From NCBI GenBank assembly GCA_946965045.2, contig OX337228.1:6014001-6078000 (forward strand): 64,000 bases of DNA. The letters are read 5' to 3'. Origin of the DNA: Epithemia pelagica. Taxonomy: Eukaryota; Protista; Bacillariophyta. A program made the position numbers and the translations under genes. Positions 913 through 19,870 of the stretch are shown piece by piece (position 1 is the first letter of the stretch; every line of letters starts with the position of its first letter). The notes under the pieces were generated by a model that made no database searches, was not told the origin of the DNA, and worked only from the letters and a program-made list of their open reading frames with translations.

Positions 913-3230
913 ATGACGTCCTATGAGAGCCTCCTTGGCCGGCTTAAAGAGAATGTGGAAACAAGAGGAGACAAAACAGCCGTGACTTTTCTGGAACCAG
1001 GAGTTAATGGTGGCAAGGTTCAGAAATCCTTTACGTATGCTGAATTATGGGCCGAGACAAGTAAAGTTGCCTTGACGATCAAGGATCAAGGATTGAAAAA
1101 AGGAGACAAAGCTGTGTTGGTGTATCCTCCATCGTTGGATTTTATGATTGCATTTCTTTCATGTCTGTAAGTGTTCACATTCTTGATTGACGATGATTTT
1201 GGAGCAGTTGTCTGAAACATGGCTATAGAAAGCTTTCTGTCATTGCTGTACCTGTTTTCCCTCCCAATCCGAACCGACGAGACACTCTTCAAATGTTCTC
1301 CAAGATTGTGCAAGCATGTGAACCCCAAATTGTTCTGACAAATAAAGAATACAATCATCTGAAGAAACTTTCGGGTATCCGTGACGCCTTTTCTTCGTTC
1401 AAACGAAGACCTAGTGATTGGCCTGAGCACTTGAAATGGGCCATCACAGACGCCCCGCAAAGTGGAAAGTCAAGTCTCAGCGATATCGAGGATCTTCCTT
1501 CCGACACTAGTGACGTTGCATTTCTTCAATTCACCTCTGGATCGACAAGTGAACCAAAGGGTGTGATGATCACTCATGACAACTTAGCACACAACTTAAC
1601 AATCATTACAAACGAGCTCGAAGCGTCTGACGACACTGTTGTAGTATCGTGGCTCCCACAGTACCACGATATGGGATTGATTGGATCTTATCTCGGAGTG
1701 CTTTATTGTGGAGGATCAGGCTACTATATGTCTCCTCTCTCATTCTTGCAGCGACCAATGCTTTGGATGGAGGCCGTGAGCAAATATCGAGCGACTCATT
1801 TGCAGGCCCCCAATTTCGCCTTTAAACTCACGTCTCGGAAATTTATTCCCTCAGACTACTCTAGGGAGTCTCTGGATTTGTCGTCAGTCAGACATGTCAT
1901 CAATGCGGCGGAACCTGTTGATGAGGAAAGTATCGAATCATTCTATAAGCAGTTTCGACCGTTTGGCTTTCAGGAAGTCATTTTCCCCACATATGGTCTT
2001 GCGGAACACACAGTTTTTGTTTGCTCAGGAGGAAAACAACGTATGACCGCTGATAAAGAAACGCTGGAGACAAATGGGGAAGTAGTCGTTGTCCAATCGG
2101 AAGGCGACGTTTCGAAGAATCAAAACGTTTCCCGGTTGATCGGCTGTGGATACCCCGCCAGGCAAGGAGTTGATGTTCGGATCGTCGAAGTTGAGACAGA
2201 AAAGGAACTGGAAGAAGGAAAAGTTGGAGAAATCTGGATCCAATCTCCAAGCAAAGCTGCCGGGTACTACAACAAATCTGAAGAGACAAAAAAGGACTTT
2301 CACGGTGAATTGAAAGGGTGCGAAGACGAAGATGGTTACCTAAAAACGGGGGATCTTGGTTTTCTTCACAACAAAGAACTTTTTATCACAGGGAGAATAA
2401 AGGACTTGATCATTGTGGGTGGGCGCAACTACTATCCCCAAGATATTGAAGGAACTGCTGAATCAACGTCACCCTCGCTCCGGCCCGGGTGTTCGGCAGC
2501 GTTCACTATTGATCAGACCCAAGCAGGCGGTGAGGAAGTAGCACTCATCTTGGAACTTAAAGAGGTCCCTCCTCACAAGGATGTCAAAACTGTTTGTGAA
2601 TCCCTGGCAAACGAGATCAAGTCGGCAGTGAATCAAGAACACTCTCTTGGACTTGCTGAAATTGTGTTACTCCAGCCTCGGACAGTTCCCAAAACTAGCA
2701 GTGGAAAGATTGCGCGTTCATGGTGTAAAAAGGCGTTCATTGCAGGTACTCTCAGTGTAGTTTTCCGAAAAAATTATTCCACTGAAAAAGCATCGTTGGA
2801 GATTGACTCAAGCAATGTCGTCGATCAACCTCGACCTATATCCTCTGTAGACGCTGACGCAATCAGGGCTTTAACCAAGAATGAGCTCGTGACGAAACTG
2901 ATTGCAGACGTCGCACGTGTTGGCTCAGTTCCCCCTGAGTCTATTGACAAAAATGCCCCAATTGTAACCATACTCAACTCTCTTGATATCTCACAATTCA
3001 AGGGTTTGTACGAATCAAAGTATGCCTGCAAGATTTCGGATGAATACATGTTTCGCGAAAGCACTACAGTTTCCAAGCTAGCTGACATTGCCAAACTTGG
3101 GCAAGCTCCAGATGACGACGGGAACAATGTATCACAGAAGGCGCAAGACAGTACAATTGTTGAAGGGAATGCAGGTGGACTTGCTGGGTGTCTTGGATGT
3201 CCACCAGGGGTGCGATGCACAATACTGTAG
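913..3230 (+). CDS. Fatty acyl-AMP ligase (FAAL)-like adenylation enzyme with C-terminal acyl-carrier-like domain and CaaX tail; 2 exons (913-1166, 1229-3230)
   Basis: Intron 1167-1228 (gtaagt...ctatag) joins FLSCL to KLSVIAVPVFPP. FAAL-type motifs: FLQFTSGSTSEPKGVMITH, SWLPQYHDMGLIG, APNFAF, NAAEPV, YGLAEHTVFV, TGDLGF, GRIKDLIIVGGRNYYPQDIE, PKTSSGKIAR. ACP-like segment with LNSL at about 2883-3100. Ends in CTIL*. Confidence 0.9.
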
Positions 3231-3350
3231 GTTATAAGTAGTTCAATTCTTTCTAAGAATAATTTAAGTTTATTCACGAAGTGGTACACATCTTGAGCTT
3301 CAGCTCAGTGCCCACGAAACGGTTCTTGAGTTCTGGGGGGTCTCTGCGGC

Positions 3351-4906
3351 TTAGGCCCAGACCCACAACCAATCCTCGTCGCTTCCATCTTGCGGAGCAG
3401 AGGATGATTCTGTACCGCGATGGTCAAGTCCCAGAACCGCAATAAAGCCACCGGGATGACGCTCAATCAACTCGAAACCTTCTTCGGCTCCTTCATACAA
3501 ATCTTTCTGGCTGGCAGATTCAGAAGACTTGTCGGCAAAGGAGTGCCAACTCAAAGCTCGCTGTGCCTTGATTTCCTTGTGAAGCTCCTCTCGAGCATAT
3601 CGGTAAAGCAGAAAAAGTCCAATCACAGCAAACAAAACACCGCCAACCATCAATGCGATGTAGAAAACGTATTCTCCAGTGTCATCTGCTTCAGTCCTTC
3701 GAATATGGTCAGTTGTTGCTCCAACCAACACCCACAGAACGATAGTTGGGATTATTCCAATCAAGGCAAAAGTATATTCTTCGAGCGAAATCTGGGTAAT
3801 GCCTCCAACATGGTTTAACGCATTGAAGGGTATGATTGGACAAAGGCGTAGCAGGGTCATGGCCCTAAAACCCTGTGTACGCATGGCCTCATCCAGGCAT
3901 TTGACAATGGGAAATCGCTTCGAAAAAAGTTCGACGAGGTCACGCATCATGTATCGACTCCGTAGAAAAGCTAAAATAGCACCCAAGCTCGAACCAATAA
4001 AACAGACAACGATTCCGGCGACGAGCCCGCCCCAGAAACCAGCGACATCACAGAACGCGTATCCAGCTCCAAAATATAAGATGGTCGGAGGAACAAAGAA
4101 CAGCGTTGCAAGCACAAAAAAGCCTGAAAGGTTGAAATTAACGCACGTTGTCAACAAGAACCGCTCCATAGAAAAGTCACTTCCACGTTCATAGATCTAC
4201 GTACCAAGAAAACATATAACTGCACCAGCAGGGTGCTCCGTCATCCACTCCAAAAACTTAGTGATGAGGGTCATAATGTATCCTAGAAAGAGAGAGGAAT
4301 GAGCTCGAGCAGTGGGTAGTTCCTTCGACCTCACAGCATATACGCTTACGTACCGAGAAAAATCAGATCAATGATCACATACATACTTATACACACAATA
4401 AGTGCACTGAGATGGAACGACGTCCACAAGAAAAAAGACACGAGATATCAGAGAATCAAACTTGTACAAAACATGTGACCAAAAGTCCTCATTGGTACCT
4501 ACGTCATGACCTTTTTCTTCCAGCTTCTGTTCTTGGCAAATCTAAGCAGCTCCCAGAAGAAAGCAACGTCTTCCTCCTGATTGCTGTCCTGTGGGGTATC
4601 GGTTTTCGAACCCTGTTGATTGTTCTCCACAGATTGTTCGCCTGCTGTCTGTTCTTCCATAGATACATAGTCGGAAGGGGCTTCGCCCGCCATGGACTTG
4701 GTAGATTTGCCCATTCTCATAAGGCCCGCTTTTTCTTTTCGTTCTCTGATTTGAATAGTCCTGTTCAAGTCGTCTATATCCGCGAGAAAGTCTTGGTGAG
4801 GATTTCTTCGGGTATTCTTCTTCTGTTTGGCTTTATCCACCTTATCCTGAACATAATTAGAAATAGACGAGCAAGATTTGCTAAAGAAGCCAAAGGGTCC
4901 TCTCAT
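3351..4906 (-). CDS. SNARE-associated Golgi / TVP38-TMEM64 (VTT/DedA superfamily) membrane protein; 4 exons, 5' end uncertain
   Basis: ORF 4499-4906 splices through two small exons (..WKKKVMT|ALIVCISMYVIIDLIFLG|YIMTLITKFLEWMTEHPAGAVICFLG|FFVLATLFFVPP..) into the 3351 ORF. Family motifs GSSLGAILAFLRSRY and LLRLCPIIPFNALN are present. Confidence 0.85.
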
Positions 4907-5400
4907 CGATCGAGACTTTCTTTTCTCCGGATGACGTGATCTTGATGGAGTATATGAATGATTGCCGTTGTCAATTGGAGAAAGGATAAGGATTACCGGT
5001 ACTAACAGGGGACACAGGGGACCAGAGACCAGAGTTCCAGATATTGAGAATTAAGACGACAAATTTTTGGTGGGGACGACTGGCTTGGACTATTCGACGG
5101 TCCAACTCGGGATGAGATACAACGCCATGCAGTTTTCCATCGTTATCGTTATGTCTTGCATGTGCTTTCTCGATTTGGCGCACGTCTCCAACTCCTACCA
5201 CCATGACGATCCAACTCTGACTTTCGCGCTCCCGCCGGCGTGTTCGGCCACCGTTTACAATCGCGCATCGTCCCTCCAGCGCACCTCTTTTCTTGCGCAG
5301 TCATAACGACCCATATGCGACCGGATGGATTTCCGCTCGCCCAAACCCAAGCGGTCATCCGACGCGTGACACATGATCCCACTCTCATGCTATACAAGAA

Positions 5401-6774
5401 ATGACCATGGTCGGCAAGAGACCGTCTCCAGAATCTGGTACCGAAAGCAACAAACGCATCATGACCGACTCTAAACCAATGACAAAGGTCCTTATCTATG
5501 GTGGAAAGACGGGATGGATTGGTGGACTGATGAATAACCTTTGCAAGGAAAAGGGTGAGTCAGCAATGAATCACGTCCATTGTTGCATTGGTGATCTGAT
5601 GATTGGCCTACGCTGGATCCCACCATGTAGTCTAATAGTTATTTTCTTTCAGGGATTGAATGTTATAACTCCGAAGTACGCATTGAAAATCGTGCCGACG
5701 TCGAAGAAGAACTTGATCGCATCAAGCCGTCTCATGTTCTCATGTCTGCGGGGATTACTGGCCGCCCCAACATTGATTGGTGCGAAGAACACAAACCCGA
5801 AACTATCCGAACCAACGTGATTGGAACGTTGAATGGTAGGTGAATGAAATAGATCGGTGCTGCACAGAGTCGCGCTTTTATTTTTGTTCTATCGGTTGGA
5901 TTGAGAAAATCTCATCATTTTCATCCATTGTCGATGCTATTGTTCAGTCGCCGACCTTACCTTCTTGAAGGGTATTCACTGCACGGTTTACGCTACGGGT
6001 TGTATTTTCAAGTACGACGAAACCCATCCCTTGGGATCAGGAAAAGGCTTTACGGAAGAGGATAAGCCTAACTTTGATGGATCATTCTACAGTCAGACAA
6101 AGGGATACATGGAACCCATGCTCAAGACCTACAGCAACTGTTTGATTTTGCGTGTTCGCATGCCCATTTCGGATGATTTGATTCAGTAAGTTCATGTCTA
6201 ACGGTAGCATGAGAGCAATGCCAGTGAGCGAATGATGAGGAGCATTATGGTGTCATTGGCCTCACAAGTTTTCGCCAATCCTTTGTAACATTTATTTTGT
6301 TCCATACACAGCCGTAGCTTTGTGACAAAGATTGCAAAGTATGAAAAGGTTGTCAACATTCCAAACTCCATGACGATTTTGCACGAAATGCTTCCAGCCT
6401 CTCTTGCCATGGCACAAGCTGCCCTTACCGGTGTCTACAACTTTACGAACCCAGGAGTTATTTCCCACAACGAAGTATTGGACCTCTTCAAAAAGTACAT
6501 TGATCCCACGTTTGAGTACAGCAACTTTACGATTGAAGAACAGGCAAAGATTCTCAAGGCTGCTCGTTCCAACAACGAGCTTGATGCCACCAAGCTTTTG
6601 AGAGATATGCCCGAGGGTGTTGTGATCAATGATATCAAGACTGCTTTTGATTTGTGTTTCCAGCGCATGAAAGCAAATCTTGAAAAAGAAGGCATTCTAC
6701 CCGATAATCTTCCCGCTGAATTCAATCATAAAGTCAATGGGGGAACCGGAAAACCGGTAACCAAGGCTTCGTAG
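5401..6774 (+). CDS. Nucleotide-rhamnose synthase/epimerase-reductase (NRS/ER, UER1-like 3,5-epimerase/4-reductase); 4 exons
   Basis: Motifs KVLIYGGKTGWIGG, ENRADVEEELDRIKPSHVLMSAGITGRPNIDWCE, ATGCIF, SFYSQTK, LRVRMPIS, VNIPNSMTIL, GVYNFTNPGVISHNEVL. Three GT-AG introns (starting about 5555, 5836, 6186) restore the frame. Confidence 0.93.
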
Positions 6775-7994
6775 ATGATCATCTGATTTTAGAAAGAATA
6801 TGAGAATTTAAAGTTTCTGATCATTCTGTTTGTTTGCCCGACTCCTTGAAACATTAGTCAGCGCGTTTCATCACAGGCTAGGAGGAGCCATATCGACGTT
6901 GTTGCAATGTTTCATTAACAAATGTGTCAAGCAGCAAGCTACGTCCATTGCCGCATTTCTTTCTCTTCCATGGCGTCAAACCTCCCAAGATCTATGTCGG
7001 ACTTCCCTGGGAGTGTATGGGACATGGGTGATCCAAGAACGTTTCTGTCAATGTCCCCGCTTCTTTATTTTTTTAGAATGACGTTCCATCGCGTACAATC
7101 CTTCCCGATTATTGTCATTTTGTATGCGTCAAACTCGTTGTATACGGCTGCGTGGGACATGACCATGTCGCACGGTTCATACACGTAAGTCGGACCTTTA
7201 ATCTGGTGTGAAGCTTGCGTTGTCATCAAGTAGAGGACATCTGCCTCAAGGCCAGAGAATTCTCGGAAGGAGTTTTGGTTATATGGGGTTCAGAATTCAG
7301 AACATGAAATACCAAAGAAGCCAAGTCACTGAGTGCCTGTGTGGATGTATAGAAAGGGGAATTTTCTCCGTAGACACTCAGGAATATGAAAGATAGTTGA
7401 ATCAGTGTATATGGTAGAAGTGCATCGATAGCATTCAACCACAGTGTCCCATAATATTAAGTTTTAGGGTCGGTGTGTGGCCCATCTGCCACACGCATTT
7501 GGTATCCCCTTGTTCGGATTTGACAATTCTGAACTGAAATAACTGTTGTCCGACAGAGATTCGATGCTTTCTTTCCATATAGCGGTGCATGGAACAAAGC
7601 CGTTTCTTCAGGTCCTTCTTCTGGAGTGGTGACGGACATGACGACCGCCATATTGCATTGGATGGGTCTGGCGAGCTAGGTAGTATGTACTCCTTCCCCG
7701 ACAAAGTCAGATTGGTTACACTGATGGACCAAAGGTGCGTTCCATTAAACCCTGGATCAACGCCCAAGCATCACAATCAGGATGGATGTCGAAAATCGGT
7801 GGATACCATCATCATATCCTAAGATCTTCTGGGTATATCCAAAATCCAAAATCCAAATGCGAAACAGATTGTACGTTTTATATGCGACCTTAATGTACAG
7901 TCTTTCCGTCGCTCGTGACTACTTCGTTTGCCATCGTCGCCGTCGGTTAAGGTTACCTGCAAATCTCAACCCATTGCAATCACAAGAATCTCCC

Positions 7995-9795
7995 ATGTAT
8001 CAAAGAGGTCGTCATCCCGATGATCGTCGCTTCACCAGAGGCGGAGGTGGACGCATGCCTCCAGGTAGTTGGGCCCGGGGTGGTGGTGGAAGAGGTCGAG
8101 GTCGAGGTCGAGGTGGCGGCCGTCATCATCATGAGAATCGACAACACCCGCCCGTAAAACAGTCCATTGATCAAGATCAAACAGTGATTGAAGAAATTCC
8201 TTCTCCCAATGGGAACAGCAGCCCTGCAGTCCGTATAGCAATTGAAGGATGCTGTCATGGGGAACTAGAAGCAGTCTACAGCCGTCTTCAACGGCACGAG
8301 GCCGATACACAACCAATAGACCTGCTACTATGCTGTGGAGATTTTGAAACCTTGCGAAACTTGTCCGATCTCCACACCATTGCGGTCCCTCCCAAATACC
8401 GGTCAATGGGTTCATTTTACAAATACTACAATGGTGAACTGGTTGCGCCTTATCTTACCATTTTTGTGTCAGGTTCGTTCGTAGAACGTCTCACAACCGA
8501 AACAAGTACCAACCATGATATTTCTCTCATACTGTCCTCTTTTTCCGTTCTCGTCCATCGAAGGCAACCATGAGGCATCACAGGCACTCAGTGAGCTATA
8601 CTACGGTGGATGGGTAGCGCCCAACATTTATTACCTTGGCGCGGCGGGTGTTGTCAACTTCTGTGGCTTGCGAATTGGAGGGATAAGTGGGATATACAAA
8701 CGTTGCGACTACCCATTCGGAAGATATGAGATACCACCTTACGATAGAGACACTCTTCGGAGTGTTTATCATGTTCGGAATGTTGACGTGTATCGCCTCT
8801 TGTCGCTGTCGAAAAGTAGCATGATGGAAGAGTCGAAAGAAAAACCTCTTCTCGACGTGTTTTTAAGTCATGATTGGCCGCTGGGGATAGAGCAACACGG
8901 CGATACAAAAGACTTGTTGCGTCGTAAACCCTTTTTTAGAGAAGAAGTGGACCAGAACTGTCTTGGGAGTCCTCCCAACATGGAAATCCTGTCCAGTTTG
9001 AAACCGAAATGGTGGTTCGCAGCTCACATGCATGTGAAATTTAAGGCCATCGTCACGCATGACAAGAATCCGTCCAGGAATCCGGTTTCGAAGAAAGGAT
9101 CTGAATCCCAGGACCTTAAAGCGATAACTCAGATTCGACCCTCTTCAACTGTCACGTCTGAAACGAAGAAAAGGAAATCAGTGGACTCTGACGACGTGCA
9201 GGAAGAAAACGCAGAAGATACCGCTGGCCAAGAAGACAAACCAACTACCACACAATTTCTGTCCACGGAAGGAGGAAATGATCCTTGCAGTGTCCCTGAC
9301 CTAACCGAGCAAATGACGAAATTTCTATCGTTGGACAAGTGTCTTCCTCGACGCCATTTCCTCACAATTGTGAACATTCCCATTCCGACTCGCCCAGATA
9401 AACCAAAACTCCAATACGATGTCAAATGGCTCTCAATTCTGCGGAAAACTCACGGACTGTCATCAAGATCAAAGAAGCGGGTCGATCTTCCATCCGATTT
9501 TGCTACGGTTGATGAAGAAGACATGGAATGGGTACATCAAAAGTTTTCGTCACTTGAGATACCAGAGAATTTTGTTCAAACTGTTCCTCCAGTGGCCAAA
9601 GGTAGTTCGATAGTAATCCTGCCACACCCATTGCCGCCTCCCTTGAGTCAAATGGGAAATCCACAGACGGATGATCTGTTGCGTATACTTGAGCTCGATC
9701 ACATTGTCACAATTCCCTACAGTCTTGGACCACAAGAATTGGACGTTGACGATCGAGATGAAATCAACATTGAACTCAGCGACGATGATACGTGA
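7995..9795 (+). CDS. DBR1: RNA lariat debranching enzyme; 2 exons (intron 8473-8563)
   Basis: Metallophosphoesterase motifs IAIEGCCHGEL, LLCCGDF, VPPKY, G|NHEAS, YYGGWVAPNIYYLG, IGGISGIY, LSHDWP, WFAAHMH, TKFLSLDKCLPRRHFL. RG-rich N-terminal extension. Confidence 0.96.
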
Positions 9796-9977
9796 TGTTA
9801 CAGTTAGTTGTTTCTACTTTTGGTCACCATAATGCCTTATTTAGTAGATATAGGGGGCGATACTTCCGTACGGTTTCCAGGGAACACAGAGAGTTATAGA
9901 ATTAATGTATCATTTGCTTCTACATTCAAACAAGTGATGAAACGACAGAAACTCATACGATGTGTGAAGAAAGCTGC

Positions 9978-12178
9978 TTAATCGTCGTCTTGACCCAGGA
10001 CAGAAAGGTCGTCAATGAAATCTTTTGGATTAATCAATGTTGTTCCACCCATAACAATTTCTCGGCCCATGTTCCTGGCGACTTCACGACCATGACGAAG
10101 CTCGCCGAAAGACAAGCCACCCAACATGAAAACAATGCAGCGTCCTCCCGTGAATTTTGTTTCTCCTAAATCATCACCGCGATCATCGGAAGAGGATTTC
10201 GCCCACTTCGATGACGCACCACCTTTTTTCCTCACACTAGCAGCAGCACCACCCCTAGCCGATCCCTCTTTGCCCTTTGATCGGCCCGACCGGCTCGACC
10301 GACTACTTGTCGCCGCTGTGCTCGGGGCCATGTCGGGCATTGGCATCACACTTGGATAGTCTTCCAAACTCAACGAATTCGACGCCAGATCCTCCATAAT
10401 AGTCTTGATTGGTGGGACATATCGACTGGCAGCATATTCGGCGTCTTCATCTGTGTCGCCACTCGACTGGTTCCTGTGATATTTAGAGAGGTAACAAAAG
10501 CAGTGAGGAATCGACCAAAGTACATCTATCACGTTTGACAATAGCAAGCACTTACACGAACATCGAAACAATACTCTTTTTCACATCCGCGGCAGCACCA
10601 GAGCTGACGATCGAAAGTCCCAGAAGTTCCAGGCTGTTGATGGTTCTAATGTGCTTCCGCGAAAAGTCTGCAGAGTTCATGAGACGCTTTCGATCTTGAG
10701 AGCGCAATCCTCCTTGACTGATGGTAGCAATAAGGAAAAGACGAAGCCTGTCTTTAGAACTCTTCATTCGGACAAGCTGGTCATCCACTTGATCCATCAT
10801 ATCACTAAGCGAAGGTGAGCGTCCTTCGTCATCTTTTCCTGTCGCCAAGGTTTGTTCGAGTTCTGAGAGGTCCAGTAGGTGCTGCTTCTTGAAAATCTCC
10901 ATGCATTCATGCGAAAGGTGCATATGCTGAGAGAGTTTGCTCATGACTTCGCGGTATTCAGGCAAAGCTTTCAGGGCAGATGCCATCTGTGAAAGAGACA
11001 TGTTTCCACCTCCACCTTTGTTGCCTAGATTCTTCCCCGAACTGGAGTTCATGATATCACGAATGCGATTTGATAGAGTTTCGATTACTGCTGCAATGTG
11101 CTTGCCCCGAATCTCAACCCAGAGCCTATCTCGTTCATCCAACAGTACGTCCTTGGTTTCAGAATCAGATGGATCACTAGCCGTATCATTTTTATAAGAA
11201 ATGCGATCACCATCCATCTTGAGTAGGTCATGGACCATGGACTGGTACGTGAAATCATGCATAAGAGGCGTGAGACAATCATTAGCACGATCCAGGAGCA
11301 GTAGCGTTCCTCGCTCACTCTTGGCGGAGCCTGAACTGGAGGACTTCGACGGCCCACCGTGGTACCACCAGTTAGGATTCTGTGAGACAAAGTCATCCAT
11401 CTTTTTATGGAAAAGTTTAGCAATCTTGCTCCCCACTTTCGAGCTCTCTGGGTATCGAATGTGGGGATATTCGTTCAGAGTGGCACAAACTGTAACAAGC
11501 CGATCTGCCACTTTAGTTTCAACAAGACTGCTTCCTTTTTTCACATGGAAAGCAGTAAAAGCATTCTTCATGTCAAGGGTAAACGCTCTTTCTTCCTTGG
11601 CCAGAAAGTCAACATTAATTTCGACAAGACCCTTGATTCGCTTCAAGAGTGGCTTGCAGTTCTTGATCTGATCAAGAAGACTATCGGACAAACGACCAAG
11701 GAAATATATGAAAACGGCATTTCCATAGAGAACTTTATCTCCACTGAAATCCTCGATCAACTTTGCAACGCTTTTCTTCCTTGGTTCCAGTAAATATATG
11801 GCTGCCATATCTGGGAATGGAGCACGCTTCTTATCGATCGACTCCACAATCGTGACTTTGCGCTCCATGATTTCGTACATACCCACGGCCGCGGATATTA
11901 CTTTCATCGCTGGGTCATCGACAATCAACACTTTCCATCCTGGATGTTTTTCTGTACAAAAGGAAAGAAATCCCAATCAGCGATCAAGACATCACAGATA
12001 TCATCAGTGACTGCGTCAAAGAAAGTCCACTGTACATACCACTTGCAGATCCAAACACGTCGTCAAGGATACGCTTCTGAACCAAGCGACGCAATCCAGG
12101 TTGTTCTCCGCTTAAACGGTCTGGAGATTTCGAAGCATTTCGGGACGAACTGCGGCGTGAAGATCGAGCGGACGACAT
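9978..12178 (-). CDS. SEC1: Sec1/Munc18-family syntaxin-binding protein (SEC1/KEULE-like); 3 exons
   Basis: Exon 1 (12178-12040) LRRLVQKRILDDVF joins WKVLIVD...VESIDKKRAPFPDMAAIYLLEP. Also EYPHIRY, LLLLDRANDCLTPLMHDFTYQSMVHDLL, HMHLSHECM, EQTLATG, SRYVPPIKTIME, FMLGGLSFGELR. Confidence 0.95.
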
Positions 12179-12472
12179 GGCGCTGGGATTGTATTGCTGA
12201 CTTTATGTTCGCAACGAACTCAAAGGCATACCATTCACACACGACTTGTGAAGAAGCGGGGAGGGTGGAGGGAGATGCCCGCGAAGAATGCAGCGGAACG
12301 GCCAATTTTTTGGAAATCCCGCTTGAAATTTTTGGGATCGACAGTCGACAAATGTCGTAAAGATTTCCGCGACTAAATTTTTTCGCACAATCCGAAGTCC
12401 AAAATCCAAAAGAAAAAAAGAAAAAATACAAATAATGGCAAAAGGTCCGACCTCATCAACATCAACGACACA

Positions 12473-13180
12473 ATGGCGGCGTACCCTTCAAACGAAGATC
12501 TCGAGGATGACCCGAGGCCTCCGAAAGAAACAAGGGATTTTGTTTATAAAGTCATAGACAGCTGTATTCGAGTTACTCTGGCTAGTTTTGGTGGAGCTCT
12601 GGCAGGATATGGCGTTGGAGCTCGCAGAGAAGAAATGAGGGTACAGGGATTCACAAACGCCCAGACAAAACTAGCACTTCCAGACCGAAGTCTTTCACCA
12701 AGTACAAGGATGGAGCTGTCCACCAAAACTCATGCACGTCAGGCACCGCCCATGAAACCGCAAGATCTCCCATCACCGAAAAAGATATTGGCACGGAGTT
12801 GGGGGATGTCGTGTTTCTTGTTCGCCTTTCTTCTGGAAACCTCGCGCATTGCCTCTCCAACAACTGTTTTATTCAAGGAAATGGATATGTTGACATTAAG
12901 GGGAGAAGACGATGTAGAGAGGCTGATGTTGAGGAAAGGACTCGCAGCAGTAGGAGATTACGCTTTGGGTGGAACTTTGGCAGGAATTTCCGGAGCAAGA
13001 GCTTGGACTACAGGTTATGCTAGGGTCCTACCATCCCTTCTTCGGGGAGCATTTTACGGAACGTTGTTGGGTATCGCAGGTGGTCTGGTTCAAGCAGGCA
13101 TTGATGTAATTGAAGTAATGGAGGAGCACCAACCTGAATCTCCAGAGTCGAAAGAGCCACCAGGCTACATGATGACATAG
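12473..13180 (+). CDS. Putative Tim17/Tim22/Tim23/PMP24-like membrane protein
   Basis: Gly-rich transmembrane segments (FGGALAGYGVG; ALGGTLAGISG; GAFYGTLLGIAGGLVQAG) with Tim17-like spacing. Overall similarity is weak. Confidence 0.5.
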   Translation: MAAYPSNEDLEDDPRPPKETRDFVYKVIDSCIRVTLASFGGALAGYGVGARREEMRVQGFTNAQTKLALPDRSLSPSTRMELSTKTHARQAPPMKPQDLPSPKKILARSWGMSCFLFAFLLETSRIASPTTVLFKEMDMLTLRGEDDVERLMLRKGLAAVGDYALGGTLAGISGARAWTTGYARVLPSLLRGAFYGTLLGIAGGLVQAGIDVIEVMEEHQPESPESKEPPGYMMT

Positions 13181-13446
13181 ATGACTTTGTGGAATAAAAG
13201 CATTTGTTGGAAATACAGTTACCATCCAACTTAATGCTTTCCGCGATCTTCTCATTGTTGTCTCCGATCCCGACTATGACACTATACCTGGAAGTGACTA
13301 CCTATGCTAAGTTGCCTAGGAGTACCTACTCCTAATCTACCTAGAGAATGTACTCCTCTGTAGTTGATCTACCTAGTGAGGTCTGAACAAAATTCCTTGG
13401 AGGTTTTGTCAATCAGCCCTCTTGGTTGGACAAGGAACAAGGAACA

Positions 13447-14807
13447 TGAACGACGACAAAGACACTACTGCAAGACCCGGTCAACAAGCTCACTCCAAGG
13501 CACTGACTTCACAAGGACCGCCCATTGATGTGAAGGACCTTGGTCGGAAGGCAAGGGCTCGACTTGCTCATGAACGTAGCAAACGTGCCGAAATTGTCCG
13601 TATTTCCCCTGACGAAGCGACACTGCTGGAGAAGCAACAGCAACAAGATAAGCAGCAAACAACAATCAAATCGGGTAGCAACAAACGATCAATACGGGAT
13701 AATTCTCTTAACGAAAAGAAATCGTCGAGAAAGCGCGGCCGTGGACAAACGAAAGGATCGTACACCTTTCCCGAGAATGCAGATATGTGGATGCCCGATA
13801 TATCTCATCTTCCGAGGTATTCGAGTAAAGAAAAACGTTCAAGCTTAGTGCGACTTCATGGTCTACCGTGTGGAACAAATGCGTTACAGATCAAAAAGTT
13901 TTTCTCCGGTCTTGAGATCCAATCGATCGCAGTGCTACTTTCCTGTGATGCAACTATTGCTGAGTGGGATGCAATTGAGGAAGTGAACAAGGATACATCA
14001 AGGTCCAAACTTTGCCATCAACGACTTTCTCCACTGGTGAAGAGACATTCTCCTCGATTCCGTGTGGTGGTCAAGTTTGACTCAGCGCCCACAGCCGAGT
14101 TGGCAGTCGATAGATCGGGGGAAACAATCAATGTTGTAAAGGAGCAAAACACGGTCACTGGTGGGAACCCTTCTCAAGTTTCTATTGTCCGTGCTTCCGT
14201 TGGAGTCTCGCTTGTTCTCAAGCCGGATGACACGTTGATTCTGCAATCCCTTGCCATTGATGCCATATCCTCTGACGCGACCCCTCGTGCGATTTACGAA
14301 ATAGGCACAAGCGTGGAGAAGAATTTACTGCCCGATGTAGACCGTATTCTATGGATGGATGCTCAGTTTCAGCTGAAATTGACTTTTAAAACGCCACATC
14401 AATGGAGAAGGAACTTCAAAGAAACTCATAACTCCATCGAAGACGATCGCCAAAATCAAAAGTACTTGGAGGCACCAGAGGCCTTGAACAGTATATTGAA
14501 CCCACCATCACATGAAACTGTTGAAGCATTGACTCGACAAAGAGAAATTTTGTTCGAGGCTCGTAGGCAGATGCTTGAAGCATCTCCGTTTCCTTCGACC
14601 GAGTTGCTTGATCCAGTACTGGGTGAAGACGACCCTGCTCTTCGATTAGCCTGTCAAGCGTGTCGTGTCCTTCGCAAGCGGTCACGGCTTATCGACGAAA
14701 AACTGTTAGAGATCCACAGAAGGCCACTCCTGATGAAGAAGTTCAGCTGTAAGCCACCGACACCCATCGAAAGGGAACCGTTTGGTTCGACTACATATGA
14801 TAACTGA
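13447..14807 (+). CDS. RNA-binding protein with a quasi-RRM (hnRNP F/H, ESRP-like) domain
   Basis: SLVRLHGLPCGTNALQIKKFFSGLEI...VVVKFDSAPTAELAVDRSG matches the qRRM pattern VRLRGLP..F.GL.I...V.F.S. The N-terminus is basic. The ORF is 461 aa from the TTG; the first ATG is at 13447. Confidence 0.65.
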
Positions 14808-14886
14808 TACACTATAGATAGGTCTATAAAACGTATACCCTGAGAGTACATGGCAATTCAGGTGGATGCGACATGGTTTCAAAGTT

Positions 14887-16176
14887 CTACCAGTCCGCTC
14901 TGCCGTATTCACCCATATTAGGAAGCTTGACGACCTCTCCCTCCATAGGATCTTCAACATCTCTGTTCGCATGGGCTTGCGCAAGATGGACAAGTTGATA
15001 GCAGGCTGTTGAAATCTTCTTGAAGGCCCTTTCATCCACCATACGACCATCCCGATCAAAAACATGGAAACTGTTTCCGATCGAAGTGTTTCCTGGAACA
15101 ACAATGGCCCCCATATCTTGCATCATTTGCTGCAAGGATCGCAACATTCTCATTCCGCCCATGGCGCCTGGACTTGTTGACATGAGAGATACCACCTTGT
15201 TCTTGAATCCAGCGTACATGCGACCTTCTCCTCGAGTAGCCCATGTGATTGCATTCAGCAACAACGGTGAAAGCAACCCGTTGTATTCAGGAGAAGCAAT
15301 TAGAATCCCATCTGCCGCAATCAAGTCGTTCTTGAGATTATGTGCCGATGCCGGAAAATTTTCACTTTCCAAATCTGGATCGTAAAGTGGGAGATCCAGT
15401 AACTTGAGATCAATGTCTACGACAATCGCTCCCTCTTCTGTTAACCTTTCCATTGCAGCGTCTCGCAACATTTTGTTGAAAGAGCCCACACGTTGGCTAC
15501 CGCATATACAGGCAATGGTGGGCTGTCGAGAGGCATTCTGCGATATCTTCTGCTTCTTGCGCTTTCCTTGTCTCGCGCTTGTTGGTATTGACGCTGCTGG
15601 TTTCTTAATGGGCGCCTCCTGACCTGCAGCACGATGGACATCTGCCGAACCCGATTTCGCAGCCAACATTTCCCGCACTTCAATGGGGCAACTAGGACAT
15701 CCTTTCTTCCCCTGGTCTACTAAATGTTTGCACCAGAATGTCGTCTGAAGCTGCTTCGACGTCTTCGTCTTGCCGCAGTAATTGCATGTTTGCCTATTCG
15801 TGCCATCCGGATTCCCCGAAACAGAGATATGGCTCCATACAAGTTGACTCAACGATTTTCTGGATCGATCACTCTTCACGGATTCCGTGGATTGGTCCAA
15901 CGGTGGAAGCACTGGGTTCGAGGCCGAAGATTCGTTCAACACTCGGAGAAGAGGGTTTGTGGCCGAACCAGAGATTGTGTTTTCGAGCGACTCTGACGAA
16001 AGAGGGAGGCTATCGTTGGTTGTAAGCCGTCCGTTTGTAGCAACCGATTCCGAGACTCCTTTCGCAATTTGTTGCAAAATTCCATTATTACTGGTCATTT
16101 TTGCGAGGCACCGAAAGCTGTGGATATCAATATGGTTCTCAAGTCGATTATTCGGTATGGTGAATCCTTTGTCCAA
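14887..16176 (-). CDS. BED zinc finger - NADPH-dependent FMN reductase (flavodoxin-like, ChrR/YhdA type) fusion; likely start ATG 16098
   Basis: One uninterrupted ORF. BED-like part: VWSHI...CNYC...KHL..GC. Basic linker: RQGKRKKQK. Reductase part: GSQRVGSFN, DLPLYDPD, ADGILIASPEYNG, LLNAITWATR, STSPGAMGG. Confidence 0.88.
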   Translation of the reverse strand: MDKGFTIPNNRLENHIDIHSFRCLAKMTSNNGILQQIAKGVSESVATNGRLTTNDSLPLSSESLENTISGSATNPLLRVLNESSASNPVLPPLDQSTESVKSDRSRKSLSQLVWSHISVSGNPDGTNRQTCNYCGKTKTSKQLQTTFWCKHLVDQGKKGCPSCPIEVREMLAAKSGSADVHRAAGQEAPIKKPAASIPTSARQGKRKKQKISQNASRQPTIACICGSQRVGSFNKMLRDAAMERLTEEGAIVVDIDLKLLDLPLYDPDLESENFPASAHNLKNDLIAADGILIASPEYNGLLSPLLLNAITWATRGEGRMYAGFKNKVVSLMSTSPGAMGGMRMLRSLQQMMQDMGAIVVPGNTSIGNSFHVFDRDGRMVDERAFKKISTACYQLVHLAQAHANRDVEDPMEGEVVKLPNMGEYGRADW

Positions 16177-17128
16177 ACAGAGTTTATTGAAAGACGAAGA
16201 ATAGCATATTCATTTCCAATTGCATTTGCATAATATCTTCAATCTTCATTCGATCCGAAGCCTGGGTCCAACCGACCATCAACAACATGAGCGAGCAAGC
16301 CCGCGCTCGCCAGCTGCTTAATTGAGCGCGTGCCTCAATAAGTGCCCCATGCTATGCTGGCGTATGTACTAAGACAAGACTAAAAGATCTGGTCTTGATA
16401 ATGCATGCGACAAAGGCATATTCGAAAGCTACTCGATAATTATACTTGCGATAAATATTCGAATACGCGATGTCGGCAACGAGTATTAGTGCTCAATATC
16501 GATCCTCATCATGTACCGATGATCACCTACCCATGCTATGGCTCCAAGCTCCAAGGACATTGGGAATAGTCTACTCCTAGAGAAGAGAGCAATAGGAATT
16601 TAAGGACATGTTGATATTCTCCATACTAGCAAATCAAAGAGGAACAAAGTTGGCATAACACGACAATGATTGACTTATAGCATGTCCATTTACGGATACC
16701 TCGCCATTCGCCGCATTCTAGGGGACTTACCATTTACCATTATCGGTAATTCAAGAGGATTTGTTCTTGTCTTGGAAGAGACCAACGGAGACTTCGTCTT
16801 CTCCTGATGGGACTTCCGTAACATGTTTACACCTGGTAATTGATCGGAGTTCTCGGTCCAGAATCTTCATAGAGCTGGATTCAGAACTCGCTACTGACTT
16901 CGGAAGTCGACTTTAATAATGTTCAACGTGTTGTTCCTAATAATTTTAAGTTTAATCTTATCGTTGCTCGCACAAATCTTGTATCTTGTATTACACCACA
17001 CCTGGTCATAACCATCAGTGAGAATCCGTGATCGACATGCATAGGATGATGCTACGGTTCCACCGGAACGACTGGTGTGTACGGCTCGAGAGGATATTCA
17101 TAATGTCCCAATCCCATATGTAAACCAT

Positions 17129-17455
17129 CTATTTCCGAGCTGGTTGCCGAGCTCCAGCTTGTTTCGCGGCGAGGGCTTTTTTCTTCTGCTGTTCGGCGTA
17201 GTGTTGAGCCCGAGCAGCTTCGTAGGCAGCAGCAGCAAATCCTCCCACCAACGGACGGTGGTTGGGTCCACCAGCTCCGGTCCCGTTGTTGGAGGGAGCG
17301 GGAGCCTTAGGAGGAGGAGCCTGCTGCGGCGTTTCTTCTTCTGATTCGTAATCCGAGTCGTCGAAATCAACAAGACCAATTCCGCCGGCCATTGGTTGAC
17401 CACCGCCTTGTCCACCAGCTCCAGCAGTGAAGATAGAAGATCCACGACGTGACAT
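17129..17455 (-). CDS. Small (108 aa) hypothetical protein with an acidic patch and a RPLVGGFAAAAYEAAR helix
   Basis: ATG at 17455 in an acaaccATG context. Protein-like composition: GGIGLVDFDDSDYESEEE...HRPLVGGFAAAAYEAARAQHY followed by a basic tail. Confidence 0.75.
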   Translation of the reverse strand: MSRRGSSIFTAGAGGQGGGQPMAGGIGLVDFDDSDYESEEETPQQAPPPKAPAPSNNGTGAGGPNHRPLVGGFAAAAYEAARAQHYAEQQKKKALAAKQAGARQPARK

Positions 17456-17901
17456 GGTTGTGCTAAGAAATGAAGAAGCTGATTCGTTGGCGAGAAAAAC
17501 CTTGGGTTCACAACAAAAAGGGAACAACCTTTTTGCTTATTCGTCGAAGCGCGAAGATGGGATTACTATTACTTGTAGTATTCCCTTTGTTGGAGTTGAG
17601 GATGGGGAAGTTGTGGGATGAAGATGTGACTTCTGGTTGTTTGGTCCTCCTGGTCATGATAACAGTGAAGAAAAGTGTATTGAGTCATTCCTTCCCCATT
17701 AGCAGTCATTCCTTCTACACGCAAAATTCGTTGGGAGTTTGACTTTGACCGGTTTGTTCGCGCGACGCGGAGCGCGGACAGACGCCAGCAGCAGATTGTC
17801 TCGAAGTCGAATGCACGAATAGCGAATAGAGATTCAGGATTGAGGTAGCAAGGGTAACCTCTTAGGAGTAGGAGCGGCAGCTCCTCTAGAGGAAATCCGG
17901 G

Positions 17902-18858
17902 ATGACCAAAAATATGACAATGTTGTTTCAAGTATGGCGATTCATTGTTGCTCCTAGCTTCTTGTGCTCTCTGATATATGCGAGAATTCCAATTGGCGAG
18001 AGACACTCGTATTCCTTAACAACCTTTGATACAGACGGAAAATTGGGACAAGTGGATTGGGCATGTCAAGCTGCCGCAATGGGGGCTCCGCTAGTTGCAG
18101 TGGTGGTCGTCGACGACAAGGATGACAATGGTGCAGGAACGACTGGAAATCATATGAAAAGAGAGAATTGCGGCATTCTAATGGCATCGCTGCAAAGACT
18201 GCCCTCAATGCTGATGGAAGATGACGGAACCTCTCGGTTTGCTCGTATTTCGTCAGAAATTGTCGTAGCCCATTCAGGTTTGTCGGCTGACGGACGTGTT
18301 GTGGTAGCCGCTGCACAACGACTCGCAATCCAGCATGAGTATACCTTTGATGAGGAAATTCCTATTGGCGTTTTTCTACAGGAATTATCTCTTTTCTTTC
18401 AAGAACACACGATGAAACCAGCCACACGACCTTTTGGCGTCATTCTGATGATTGCATATGTTCCCAAGATCCGTCTTTCGACAGCCAACCAAAATCACAA
18501 AACACAGTTATTCCGCTTAGATCCCTCTGGTTCAATTTCCGGTCTGGGGTCAAGCGCAATCATCAACGGCAAAGACCTCAACAATCATGAACTGGAGCAA
18601 CTTTTTCAGCGAACCACAAAGGAATCAGAAAGCGACGAGGAAAAGTTTGTTGACGACTCAAATCAAGTTCCTAGTCACAAGAGAATTGCTTCGTTTCTTC
18701 GTCATGCCTTGCAACGGCAAACCCAGATGCAAGGACAGGAAAAGACTCTTGACAATGAGACTATCGTGTCTGCCGTCCTATCTCAGTCCGTGGGCTTTTC
18801 AGTTCGTCGGCATCCAATGGTATCTCATCCACAACATGCGGAAGATGCCATCAGATGA
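17902..18858 (+). CDS. Divergent 20S proteasome alpha subunit (alpha-2-like) with hydrophobic N-terminal extension
   Basis: ERHSYSLTTFDTDGKLGQVDWA resembles the alpha-2 N-terminus YSFSLTTFSPSGKL.QIEYA. Also HSGLSADGRVVV, RPFGVILMIAY, LFRLDPSGS. About 30 extra N-terminal residues. Confidence 0.85.
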   Translation: MTKNMTMLFQVWRFIVAPSFLCSLIYARIPIGERHSYSLTTFDTDGKLGQVDWACQAAAMGAPLVAVVVVDDKDDNGAGTTGNHMKRENCGILMASLQRLPSMLMEDDGTSRFARISSEIVVAHSGLSADGRVVVAAAQRLAIQHEYTFDEEIPIGVFLQELSLFFQEHTMKPATRPFGVILMIAYVPKIRLSTANQNHKTQLFRLDPSGSISGLGSSAIINGKDLNNHELEQLFQRTTKESESDEEKFVDDSNQVPSHKRIASFLRHALQRQTQMQGQEKTLDNETIVSAVLSQSVGFSVRRHPMVSHPQHAEDAIR

Positions 18859-18925
18859 TACCCTTTCCGGTCAAACTGAATGATGTCAAAAGGAAATTTA
18901 GCGTTCGATCAGCCACCAGCTGGTT

Positions 18926-19870
18926 TTACTTTCTCTTTTTGTTTTTCTTCTTTTCCTTGAGCTGTTGTTTCTTATGCCGTTGCTTATCGGCTTCATCTTG
19001 CTTTTGCAAAATTGATGTGGATGGTGACTTTCCACTTTCGGATGCAGTGAGGGCATTCGTCTTCCATGTTTCAACTGTCATCGCCTGTTTTTCCGTAAAA
19101 TGCAACATGGAGGTCGCTTCGTCTGACGTTGCCACGATTTCGCACAAGAATGCATGCACCATCGTAGCTAGTTCACTGCCACAACGTTTGAAATAGCCAG
19201 GTTTTGAACCCGATAATGGACCAGATTGCAAAGCATGCTGAAGTAGCTCAAACAAGGCCTGACCAACTTGTATCTTGTGCGAGAGGGACACCACAGGTTG
19301 TTGATTTTCTTCTTTGACATCTTTCTCGTAGTGACGAACAATGCTTTTCCATTCATCGACACAGTTTCGAACCGCATTCAAAACGTTGGCTTGAAATGAA
19401 TCCGTACTAAACAAGCCGTCTTTGCTGGAAGAAAAGGATTGGCGATTGTTCTGAATTCGTTTCAATAAATGTTGAACATTGGCTTGAACATTTGGATTTG
19501 ATGTTTCTTCTTGACATTGAATCAAAGGAGAAGAGATGGACACAATATCGTCTTCGGTGTCATCACTAATCCTTGATTCTTTGCTACTGTCAACTTCATC
19601 AACTTGACAACTTTGGACTGTGTCCTCATGGTCAATTAATATTTCTGGCTCAGGTCCTTCCACCTCAAGGCGTTGTTCAATGTGTGATTCCCCAGTACTG
19701 TTGTTGTCGGTGCTAGCGGCAGAGTTCAAAAGGGCGAAATCTTGAGTAGAAACAGGAGGAGAAGTTGTCTGGGTTCGCCGCCGTCTGGCGTTGTATTTCG
19801 GCAACCGTCGGTCGTTGGGACCTCCTCGGCCACGAAAGATTCGACGCTGCTGCGGGTGCTGAGAGCTCAT
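18926..19870 (-). CDS. Hypothetical protein (disordered N-terminal half, helical C-terminal half, lysine-rich tail)
   Basis: 314-aa open frame with a structured-looking segment LFELLQHALQSGPLSGSKPGYFKRCG. No recognised family. Confidence 0.7.
   Translation of the reverse strand: MSSQHPQQRRIFRGRGGPNDRRLPKYNARRRRTQTTSPPVSTQDFALLNSAASTDNNSTGESHIEQRLEVEGPEPEILIDHEDTVQSCQVDEVDSSKESRISDDTEDDIVSISSPLIQCQEETSNPNVQANVQHLLKRIQNNRQSFSSSKDGLFSTDSFQANVLNAVRNCVDEWKSIVRHYEKDVKEENQQPVVSLSHKIQVGQALFELLQHALQSGPLSGSKPGYFKRCGSELATMVHAFLCEIVATSDEATSMLHFTEKQAMTVETWKTNALTASESGKSPSTSILQKQDEADKQRHKKQQLKEKKKNKKRK

What the first reader, a model, noticed from the sequence alone, without database searches (positions are those of the whole stretch)
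14887..16098. BED zinc finger + NLS fused to an NADPH-dependent FMN reductase: candidate redox-sensing DNA-binding protein
Seen in sequence: one intron-less ORF contains a BED-type finger (VWSHI at ~15835, CNYC at ~15780, KHL..GC at ~15720-15690), a basic linker RQGKRKKQK, and a complete flavodoxin-fold reductase with intact FMN/NADPH motifs (GSQRVGSFN, SPEYNG, SPGAMGG; ~15520-14960). Established: BED fingers are DNA-binding modules typical of hAT transposases and their domesticated transcription factors. ChrR/YhdA/Lot6-type FMN reductases reduce quinones, chromate and ferric chelates and form oligomers. Inference: a transposon-derived DNA-binding domain has been coupled to a flavoenzyme, giving a nuclear one-component sensor of NAD(P)H, quinone or metal stress. 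I do not recognise this architecture from known families.
Basis: partly seen in the sequence, partly recalled or inferred. Interest (0 to 1): 0.78.

Follow-up and report, generated by a model that had tools for sequence, protein, structure and literature searches.

The report
BED finger fused to flavin reductase
A diatom gene joins a transposon-type zinc finger and a nuclear-import-like basic stretch to a working-looking flavin quinone reductase; the fusion is expressed and conserved in a small group of diatoms, so it is a real, undescribed protein design whose role is untested.

Summary
Window 14887-16098 (-) is one intron-less 403-aa ORF with five parts:
- a disordered N-terminus;
- a folded Cys2-His-Cys finger (res 79-160);
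- a disordered basic linker holding KRKK;
- a ChrR/YieF-class FMN_red domain (Pfam E 1.7e-31);
- a conserved tail.

On its own the finger misses Pfam's zf-BED cut-off (13.3 vs 20.6 bits). A profile of it, however, retrieves bona fide zf-BED and DUF659 (hAT-type) proteins. The nearest shapes to its AF2 model (pLDDT 86) in the ESM Atlas are BED/hAT clusters.

The same fusion occurs in Epithemia clementina (syntenic), two Entomoneis transcriptomes, another ENA assembly, and a metagenome scaffold where a 106-nt intron joins the two halves. All fused proteins form one clade nested among unfused algal reductases.

The finger is under purifying selection: pN is 0.15-0.17, against about 0.5 in the N-terminus, with pS saturated. 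An RNA-like run covers the whole ORF without joints.

The transposon origin and the reality of the fusion are supported. Nuclear location, DNA binding and redox sensing remain inference.

It is a new domain architecture built from known parts, present in databases only as "hypothetical protein".

The parts
14887..16098 (-). Complete intron-less CDS, 403 aa plus stop (14887-14889)
   Evidence: ORF list and translation. The start is conserved with orthologues. The RNA-like contig covers it without joints.
16099..16172 (-). 5' leader, at least 74 nt, with no ATG upstream of the start
   Evidence: X6 contig record 12 ends at 16172 and intergenic 16198-16779 is uncovered in X6. Sequence read.
15865..16098 (-). 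Residues 1-78: poorly conserved, predicted disordered N-terminus
   Evidence: pLDDT below 50. aa identity 0.32-0.36 and pN 0.48-0.51 between the three closest fused genes.
15619..15864 (-). Residues 79-160: BED-type zinc finger module. Proposed ligands are C105, C108, H125 and C134. Two following helices are conserved in the subfamily.
   Evidence: Invariant Cys and His columns. AF2 pLDDT 85.8. Atlas nearest shapes are BED/hAT clusters. The profile reaches bona fide zf-BED proteins. pN 0.15-0.17.
15523..15618 (-). Residues 161-192: disordered basic linker. The KRKK cluster (RQGKRKKQK, 15547-15573) is NLS-like.
   Evidence: pLDDT below 50 for residues 161-186. A K/R cluster is present at this place in all fused proteins although the linker is otherwise poorly conserved.
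14938..15522 (-). Residues 193-387: flavodoxin-fold NAD(P)H-dependent FMN reductase of the ChrR/YieF/PA1204 class
   Evidence: Pfam FMN_red E 1.7e-31. PDB sequence hits 1rtt, 3svl and 4hs4. Foldseek TM 0.88-0.91, rmsd about 1.9. Motif residues invariant.
14890..14937 (-). Residues 388-403: C-terminal tail with NMGEYGxxDW, shared with unfused algal relatives
   Evidence: E397, Y398 and G399 are invariant in 18 sequences. The nearest bacterial relatives are shorter (about 190 aa) and match only 72-87% of the query, so they appear to lack it. Low pLDDT.

Best explanation
Shown:
- This is a real, transcribed, single-exon diatom gene.
- Its product has two independently folded domains on a flexible string: a Cys2-His-Cys BED-type zinc finger of a subfamily otherwise carried by hAT-like transposase-sized proteins, and a ChrR/YieF-class NAD(P)H-dependent FMN quinone reductase with all flavin-binding motifs intact. 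A disordered basic linker with a KRKK cluster joins them.
- The fusion arose once, in the ancestor of the Epithemia-like and Entomoneis diatoms. A transposon-type finger was placed in front of a short, mostly leaderless algal reductase. One relative still has an intron at the junction.
- Both halves have been kept under purifying selection since.

Inferred mechanism:
- The basic cluster imports the protein into the nucleus.
- The finger, multiplied by the dimer or tetramer that this reductase class forms, tethers it to DNA or chromatin.
- There the still-active flavoenzyme uses NAD(P)H to reduce quinones or similar electrophiles.
- This places the activity, or a read-out of flavin redox state, at the genome.

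Whether the output is local protection or gene regulation is not decided by the evidence.
For: Architecture:
- Pfam FMN_red at 109 bits.
- The finger profile retrieves 40 representatives, including DUF659 proteins of about 900 aa and proteins scoring 37-117 bits on zf-BED.
- zf-BED is the top family among the aligned finger segments: 4 of 5 orthologues at E up to 10 and 9 of 43 members at E up to 0.01.
- AF2 finger model: pLDDT 85.8, pTM 0.71.
- Atlas nearest shapes are zf-BED, zf-BED_2, DUF659 and Dimer_Tnp_hAT clusters, TM 0.5-0.64.
- The full-length model shows two folded domains separated by disordered residues 161-186.
- The reductase half superposes on 1rtt, 3svl and 3s2y at TM 0.88-0.91, with GSxRxGSFN, PEYN and SPGxMGG conserved.

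Conservation:
- Fused orthologues occur in Epithemia clementina, two Entomoneis strains (complete transcript ORFs) and ENA assemblies.
- The convergent neighbour gene is also conserved in Epithemia.
- L001 carries the same fusion through a 106-nt GT..AG in-frame intron.
- The fused proteins form one clade, SH-aLRT 99, nested within unfused algal proteins.

Selection: finger pN 0.15-0.17, against 0.48-0.51 in the N-terminus and 0.08-0.10 in the reductase, with pS 0.66-0.82, which is saturated.

Expression:
- The X6 contig 13414-16172 covers the whole ORF plus 74 nt, with no joints. Its holes fall only in intergenic DNA.
- A metatranscriptome contig (X1) lies on 15735-15958, inside the N-terminal/finger part.
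Against: - The window protein's own zf-BED score is below Pfam's cut-off.
- The His-to-Cys spacing (H-x8-C) is longer than in most BED fingers.
- Solved BED structures match only weakly: ZBED2 and ZBED1 at Z 2.6, and nothing significant by Foldseek.
- The AT-hook-like GRP that precedes the finger in transposase-like relatives is degenerate here: RKS in the window protein, GKP in Entomoneis.
- No tool tested localisation, zinc, DNA binding or catalysis.
- X6 is only inferred to be RNA. Contigs cannot exclude an extra internal start that would give a finger-less isoform.
- Some BED fingers (ZBED3) act as protein-binding modules.
Confidence: 0.55

Rival explanations
1. Redox-sensing transcription factor. 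The flavin's redox state or NAD(P)H occupancy changes the conformation or oligomeric state of the reductase. That switches BED-finger DNA binding on or off, as a eukaryotic one-component sensor analogous to PutA or the Lot6p-Yap4 switch.
For: - A DNA-binding-type domain and a cofactor-binding domain sit in one conserved polypeptide.
- Both are under purifying selection.
- There is precedent that FMN quinone reductases act as redox switches for transcription factors: Lot6p/Yap4 (PMC6545440).
- There is precedent that a flavoenzyme with an N-terminal DNA-binding domain is an autorepressor: PutA (PMC5293562).
Against: - The two domains are joined by a disordered linker of about 30 residues, and no contact between them is predicted. 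That gives no obvious path for allostery.
- The catalytic motifs are as conserved as in unfused enzymes, which fits plain catalysis equally well.
- No target sites or regulon are known.
Confidence: 0.3
2. The finger is a protein- or RNA-binding adaptor rather than a DNA binder. It docks the reductase onto a partner complex, for example the proteasome, an RNA-processing complex or a chromatin protein. The basic cluster serves that interaction or import.
For: - The best, though weak, solved-structure matches include the Serrate/ARS2 zinc-finger region (Z 3.8) and ZBED3 in a protein complex.
- The AT-hook-like GRP of transposase-like relatives is lost in the fused proteins.
Against: - All of these structural matches are below meaningful Z.
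- The subfamily's other members are transposase-like proteins, where BED fingers bind DNA. This rests on established knowledge of hAT elements, and DUF659 co-occurrence is seen.
Confidence: 0.12
3. Annotation artefact. Only the reductase is made, from an internal start, and the upstream open frame with the finger is a leader or a decaying transposon remnant.
For: - Contigs cannot show transcript starts.
- An in-frame Met (residue 143) lies after the finger.
Against: - The finger has pN 0.15-0.17 with saturated pS.
- Cys and His ligands are invariant across genera.
- Two Entomoneis transcriptomes hold complete fused ORFs.
- Splicing is needed to join the halves in L001.
- RNA-like coverage reaches 74 nt upstream of the first ATG.
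Confidence: 0.03

Closest known systems
ChrR/YieF (E. coli), PA1204 (1rtt), Gh-ChrR and FerB: class I NAD(P)H-dependent FMN quinone/chromate reductases
   Same: - Same fold: TM 0.84-0.91.
- Same FMN-binding motifs: GSxRxGSFN, PEYN and the Gly-rich loop.
- 26-28% identity.
- Pfam FMN_red well above cut-off.
   Different: - Those are bacterial enzymes of about 190 aa without extensions.
- This protein carries a 192-residue N-terminal extension (disordered region, BED finger, basic linker).
- It also carries a C-terminal tail (NMGEYGxxDW) shared only with algal relatives.
BED fingers of hAT transposases and their domesticated derivatives (ZBED proteins, DAYSLEEPER, DREF/BEAF)
   Same: - VW.H aromatic signature, CxxC hairpin and a helix carrying His, with a Cys as last ligand.
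- Relatives carry DUF659.
- Atlas shape neighbours are hAT/BED clusters.
   Different: - No transposase core or hAT dimerisation domain is present.
- The partner is a flavoenzyme.
- The H-to-C spacing is longer.
- Two extra helices follow the finger.
- It scores below the Pfam cut-off on its own.
PutA, the trifunctional proline utilisation flavoenzyme
   Same: An N-terminal DNA-binding domain is fused to a flavoenzyme in one chain. PutA moonlights as a transcriptional repressor (PMC5293562).
   Different: - PutA is bacterial, with a ribbon-helix-helix domain, FAD and proline dehydrogenase activity.
- There is no homology to either half of this protein.
- The analogy is functional only and is untested here.
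Lot6p-Yap4 (yeast) and NQO1-p53 (mammals)
   Same: Lot6p is a member of the same FMN_red superfamily (1t0i appears). The redox state of its flavin controls the fate of a transcription factor (PMC6545440).
   Different: There the regulator is a separate protein and the proteasome mediates the effect. Here a nucleic-acid-binding-type finger is fused in cis.

Membership tests
zf-BED (PF02892) | Pfam profile match above the gathering score | tested here: not met
   The window protein scores 13.3 bits against a cut-off of 20.6, E 0.085. The best orthologue finger reaches E 8.5e-5.
zf-BED (PF02892) | Homology to bona fide BED fingers shown by a profile search | tested here: met
   The profile of the five fused fingers retrieves, at whole-library E of 7.6e-4 or better, proteins that score 23-117 bits on zf-BED: P0038, P0043, P0051, P0053, P0057 and P0056.
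zf-BED (PF02892) | Cx2C ... H-x(3-5)-[H/C] zinc ligands with an upstream aromatic signature | tested here: inconclusive
   C105, C108, H125 and C134 are invariant or at least 90% conserved over 43 fingers, and VW.H lies upstream. The H-to-C spacing is 8 in the window protein. In most aligned relatives the fourth-ligand Cys lies only a few residues after the His. Zinc binding was not tested.
zf-BED (PF02892) | BED fold: beta-hairpin plus helix | tested here: met
   AF2 pLDDT 85.8, with three strands followed by a helix ending at the His. Atlas nearest shapes are BED/hAT clusters, TM 0.5-0.64. Solved BED entries match only at Z 2.0-2.6.
zf-BED (PF02892) | Binds DNA | not testable with these tools
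   Needs EMSA, DAP-seq or ChIP.
FMN_red (PF03358), ChrR/YieF class | Pfam profile match above the gathering score | tested here: met
   109.3 bits against a cut-off of 24, residues 194-341.
FMN_red (PF03358), ChrR/YieF class | FMN-binding motifs: GSxRxxSxN loop, PEYN and the Gly-rich loop | tested here: met
   S201, R203, S206, N208, P270, E271, N273, S309, P310, G311, G314 and G315 are invariant in 18 sequences (G200 is nearly invariant). They align to the same motifs in 1rtt, 3u7r and 3svl.
FMN_red (PF03358), ChrR/YieF class | Flavodoxin-like fold superposable on solved members | tested here: met
   TM by target 0.88-0.91, rmsd 1.8-2.1, to 1rtt, 3svl and 3s2y.
FMN_red (PF03358), ChrR/YieF class | NAD(P)H-dependent quinone/chromate reductase activity; dimer or tetramer | not testable with these tools
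   Needs an enzyme assay and SEC-MALS. No multimer prediction was available.
ArsH (TIGR02690) | NCBIfam equivalog cut-off | tested here: not met
   44.8 bits against a cut-off of 292.
hAT transposase | DDE/RNase-H core (DUF659 region) and hAT dimerisation domain | tested here: not met
   No such Pfam hit in the 403-aa protein. Only the finger is shared with DUF659 proteins.
One-component redox-sensing DNA-binding regulators (PutA- or Rex-like, by function) | DNA binding that changes with cofactor redox state | not testable with these tools
   Only the architecture is established: a finger and a flavin domain in one chain.

The most novel reading that the evidence does not exclude
A eukaryotic one-polypeptide redox switch. 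The FMN/NAD(P)H state of a quinone reductase controls DNA binding by a domesticated transposon BED finger. This would give raphid diatoms of the Epithemia-Entomoneis group a direct line from cellular redox or quinone stress to transcription, as a cis-fused counterpart of Lot6p-Yap4 or PutA.
Probability: 0.22. Interest if true: 0.75.

Novelty: new variant of a known kind. Interest (0 to 1): 0.52.

Why it matters
Both halves belong to well-known families. Their union is not described in any paper I could find, and in databases it is labelled only "hypothetical protein", with the finger undetected.

It is a clean, datable case of a transposon finger captured by a metabolic enzyme gene. The capture happened once, an intron is still at the seam in one lineage, and both halves have been kept under selection.

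If the finger does bind DNA, the protein would be a compact test case for how flavoenzymes are wired to the genome in eukaryotes. The two candidate roles are local protection against quinone or oxidant damage, and a direct redox-to-transcription switch.

The experiments are straightforward: localisation, EMSA with and without NAD(P)H, and enzyme assays.

Tried and rejected
1. Foldseek of the finger model against the PDB gave nothing at E 0.001 or better; the top rows were unrelated KatG fragments.
2. VIA-align over 48,161 chains gave a best Z of 3.8. ZBED1, ZBED2 and ZBED3 came in only at Z 2.0-2.6, too weak to count alone.
3. The finger profile against PDB sequences found nothing (E of 1 or worse).
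4. ArsH and SsuE membership was rejected on NCBIfam cut-offs.
5. A second copy of the finger or the reductase in the 64-kb window: none found by tblastn. The donor transposon is therefore not nearby.
6. A bacterial origin of the reductase half:
   - The nearest non-algal relatives are bacterial proteins of about 190 aa, 36-45% identical, many of them cyanobacterial.
   - The quick, midpoint-rooted tree only shows a long branch between the algal and bacterial groups, so the donor is not resolved.
   - The careful tree search did not finish in the time allowed.
7. dN/dS proper could not be computed for several regions because synonymous sites are saturated. pN and pS are reported instead.
8. Paper searches for zf-BED plus FMN reductase found 0 papers. 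BED zinc finger plus diatom found only a gene-family expansion note in Nitzschia.
9. The scan's own notes held nothing on this feature.

Full report
**1. What is in the sequence**

On the minus strand an ORF is open from 16176 to 14887. The first ATG is at 16098 and gives a 403-aa protein.

Pfam finds FMN_red (PF03358) at E 1.7e-31, 109 bits, residues 194-341. It finds zf-BED only at E 0.085, 13.3 bits against a gathering score of 20.6. The reductase half is therefore certain, while the BED call needed further work.

**2. The finger is a BED finger of a divergent, transposase-associated subfamily**

Five full-length relatives share the N-terminal module. The invariant pattern is VW.H ... C.YC.K.K.SKQLQTTFW..H.VD...KGCP.CP, followed by a conserved helix.

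- Scanned singly, four of the five fingers list zf-BED, the best at E 8.5e-5.
- A profile of the five fingers, searched against 1.84 billion representatives, found 40 proteins at E 0.001 or better, of 89-1518 aa, often with 2-5 finger copies.
- Several members of about 900 aa carry DUF659, the domain that accompanies BED fingers in hAT transposases.
- The more distant hits are bona fide BED proteins by Pfam: P0043 at 116.9 bits, P0038 at 67.9, P0051 at 59.7, P0053 at 54.0 (with DUF659) and P0057 at 36.9.
- In a 43-finger alignment, C105 and C108 are invariant, and H125 and C134 are at least 90% conserved (window protein numbering). This gives a CCHC site. The His-to-Cys spacing is 8 here, longer than in most aligned relatives.
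- AlphaFold2 with that alignment gives a confident model: pLDDT 85.8, pTM 0.71, a short helix, three strands, a helix ending at the His, then two more helices.
- Solved structures match only weakly: no Foldseek hit at E 0.001 or better, a best VIA-align Z of 3.8, and ZBED2 and ZBED1 at Z 2.6.
- The nearest shapes in the ESM Atlas are almost all clusters carrying BED-type domains, zf-BED_2, DUF659 or Dimer_Tnp_hAT, with TM by query 0.5-0.64 over 63-80 residues.

Together this supports "BED-type finger of hAT-like origin". The caveat is that the window protein alone would not pass Pfam.

**3. The reductase half**

By sequence, the closest solved chains are PA1204 (1rtt), E. coli YieF/ChrR (3svl), Gluconacetobacter chromate reductase (4hs4, 3s2y) and FerB (3u7r). 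The full-length AF2 model superposes on them at TM 0.84-0.91 and rmsd 1.8-2.8.

The flavin-binding loop, the PEYN motif and the Gly-rich loop are invariant in 18 aligned sequences. They align to the same motifs in the solved enzymes. ArsH and SsuE equivalog cut-offs are missed by a wide margin.

The C-terminal tail NMGEYGxxDW is shared with unfused algal relatives. The nearest bacterial relatives are shorter (about 190 aa) and match only 72-87% of the query, so they appear to lack it.

**4. Domain layout**

The full-length model shows:
- residues 1-78 disordered;
- 79-160 folded (pLDDT 80-96);
- 161-186 disordered, holding the KRKK cluster;
- about 190-387 folded;
- the last 16 residues uncertain.

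No contact between finger and reductase is predicted.

A K/R cluster (KRKK, RRKKK or RRRKK) stands at the same place in all fused proteins, although the rest of the linker is only 28-58% identical. I read it as a monopartite nuclear import signal. This is inferred from the K-K/R-x-K/R consensus, not tested.

**5. The fusion is real, expressed and conserved**

*Relatives.* The same architecture occurs in:
- Epithemia clementina (P0002, 71% identical overall);
- an ENA assembly (P0003);
- Entomoneis sp. CCMP2396 and CCMP467, both complete ORFs from MMETSP transcriptomes.

*Synteny.* In Epithemia the convergent downstream neighbour is also conserved: 45% identity, E 7e-102.

*An intron at the seam.*
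- On metagenome scaffold L001 the finger and the reductase were called as two genes.
- They are joined in frame by a 106-nt GT..AG intron (3018-3123), between ...SSDVH and RAASQISDQ...
- The splice restores exactly the linker seen in Entomoneis.
- In that organism the two halves can therefore be joined only by splicing.
- An intron at this junction would fit exon capture as the origin.

*Tree.* A quick maximum-likelihood tree of the reductase halves puts all fused proteins, including the mis-split L001 gene, in one clade with SH-aLRT 99. That clade is nested inside unfused algal proteins, which are themselves separated from bacterial ones by a long, supported branch. This is the quick tree, rooted at the midpoint. 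Every second bacterial hit was left out, and the careful search did not finish.

*Selection.* Synonymous sites are saturated everywhere (pS 0.58-0.84).

| Region | pN among the three closest genes |
|---|---|
| Finger | 0.15-0.17 |
| N-terminus | 0.48-0.51 |
| Reductase | 0.08-0.10 |

*Expression.*
- Run X6 behaves as RNA, although its kind is not on record.
- Its holes coincide with intergenic DNA. One neighbouring locus has 40-100 times more depth, an excess that the Hi-C run X5 does not show.
- X6 has one contig over 13414-16172. This covers both convergent genes, including the whole ORF and 74 nt upstream of the ATG, with no joints.
- A metatranscriptome contig from another study (X1, 224 nt, 3 differences) lies on 15735-15958, inside the N-terminal/finger part.
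- Contigs cannot show starts or exclude an additional internal start.
- X3 holds the whole stretch near-identically and may be the source assembly, so it is not independent support.

**6. How it most likely works**

Shown: a two-domain protein in which both domains are conserved, the flavin motifs are intact, and the finger is of transposase type.

Inferred:
- nuclear import through the basic cluster;
- tethering to DNA or chromatin by the finger, probably multivalent because ChrR-class enzymes are dimers or tetramers (established knowledge of that family, not tested here);
- NAD(P)H-driven two-electron reduction of quinones or similar acceptors at that location.

The evidence does not separate a protective role from a regulatory one.
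- Regulatory precedents exist. The Lot6p flavin state controls Yap4 (PMC6545440). PutA carries a DNA-binding domain on a flavoenzyme (PMC5293562).
- The long disordered linker, with no predicted interdomain contact, argues mildly against tight allostery.
- Most unfused relatives are short and leaderless, and two have signal-peptide-like N-termini. The fusion therefore probably changed the enzyme's address.
- In transposase-like relatives the finger is preceded by a GRP, an AT-hook-like core. This is degenerate in the fused proteins, which weakens a simple "same DNA-binding mode" argument.

**7. Comparison and novelty**

- Each half is a member of a known family. Membership is firm for FMN_red and indirect but consistent for BED.
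- The protein is not a transposase, having no DUF659 or hAT dimerisation domain. It is not ArsH.
- I found no paper containing both zf-BED and FMN reductase. The public copies are unnamed or "hypothetical protein", with only FMN_red precomputed.
- I rate it a new variant of a known kind: a new, lineage-restricted domain architecture.
- An unrelated BED plus DsbA-like fusion in Amoebidium (P0056) hints that BED fingers have been joined to redox enzymes more than once.

**8. Verdict**

- The fusion is real and conserved (about 0.9).
- That it is a nuclear, nucleic-acid-tethered active reductase is likely (about 0.55).
- A true redox-sensing regulator is possible (about 0.2-0.3).
- Interest is moderate, at 0.52.

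Noticed in passing
window 16965-17578: In the RNA-like run X6, contig depth here is 3,000-19,000, against about 185 for neighbouring genes. The Hi-C run X5 shows no excess. This points to a very highly expressed small gene. The 132-aa ORF 17129..17527 (-) has no Pfam hit.
   Followed up: partly
window 13446-14804 (+): The convergent neighbour (453 aa) has no Pfam hit. It is 45% identical to the gene at the same position beside the Epithemia clementina orthologue. It holds a 'VRLHGLPxGT..QIKKFFSGL' stretch that resembles a quasi-RRM motif; this is from memory and untested.
   Followed up: partly
L001 2649-3891: On this metagenome scaffold the fused gene was called as two genes (P0019 and P0007/P0062). 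A 106-nt GT..AG intron (3018-3123) joins them in frame at the finger/linker seam.
   Followed up: yes
P0056 (Amoebidium parasiticum transcript, 313 aa): zf-BED (22.9 bits) fused to a DSBA-like thioredoxin domain. This is another BED plus redox-enzyme fusion, in an unrelated eukaryote.
   Followed up: no
P0021, P0028-P0030, P0032, P0036, P0039, P0047, P0049 (finger relatives): In transposase-like relatives the finger is preceded by a GRP, an AT-hook-like core ('GGRPxxxxVWxH'). The fused proteins have GKP or RKS there.
   Followed up: no
P0006 (239 aa, 939-nt Logan contig): This is the sister of the fused clade in the tree. It starts 'MKRKISDQ', like the '..ISDQT' linker of the Entomoneis fusions. 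It may be a fused gene cut off by the contig end, so the fusion could be slightly wider than counted.
   Followed up: no
L003 8556-9227: A DDE_Tnp_1_7 (piggyBac-type) transposase gene lies about 3 kb downstream of the fused gene in the ENA assembly that holds P0003.
   Followed up: no
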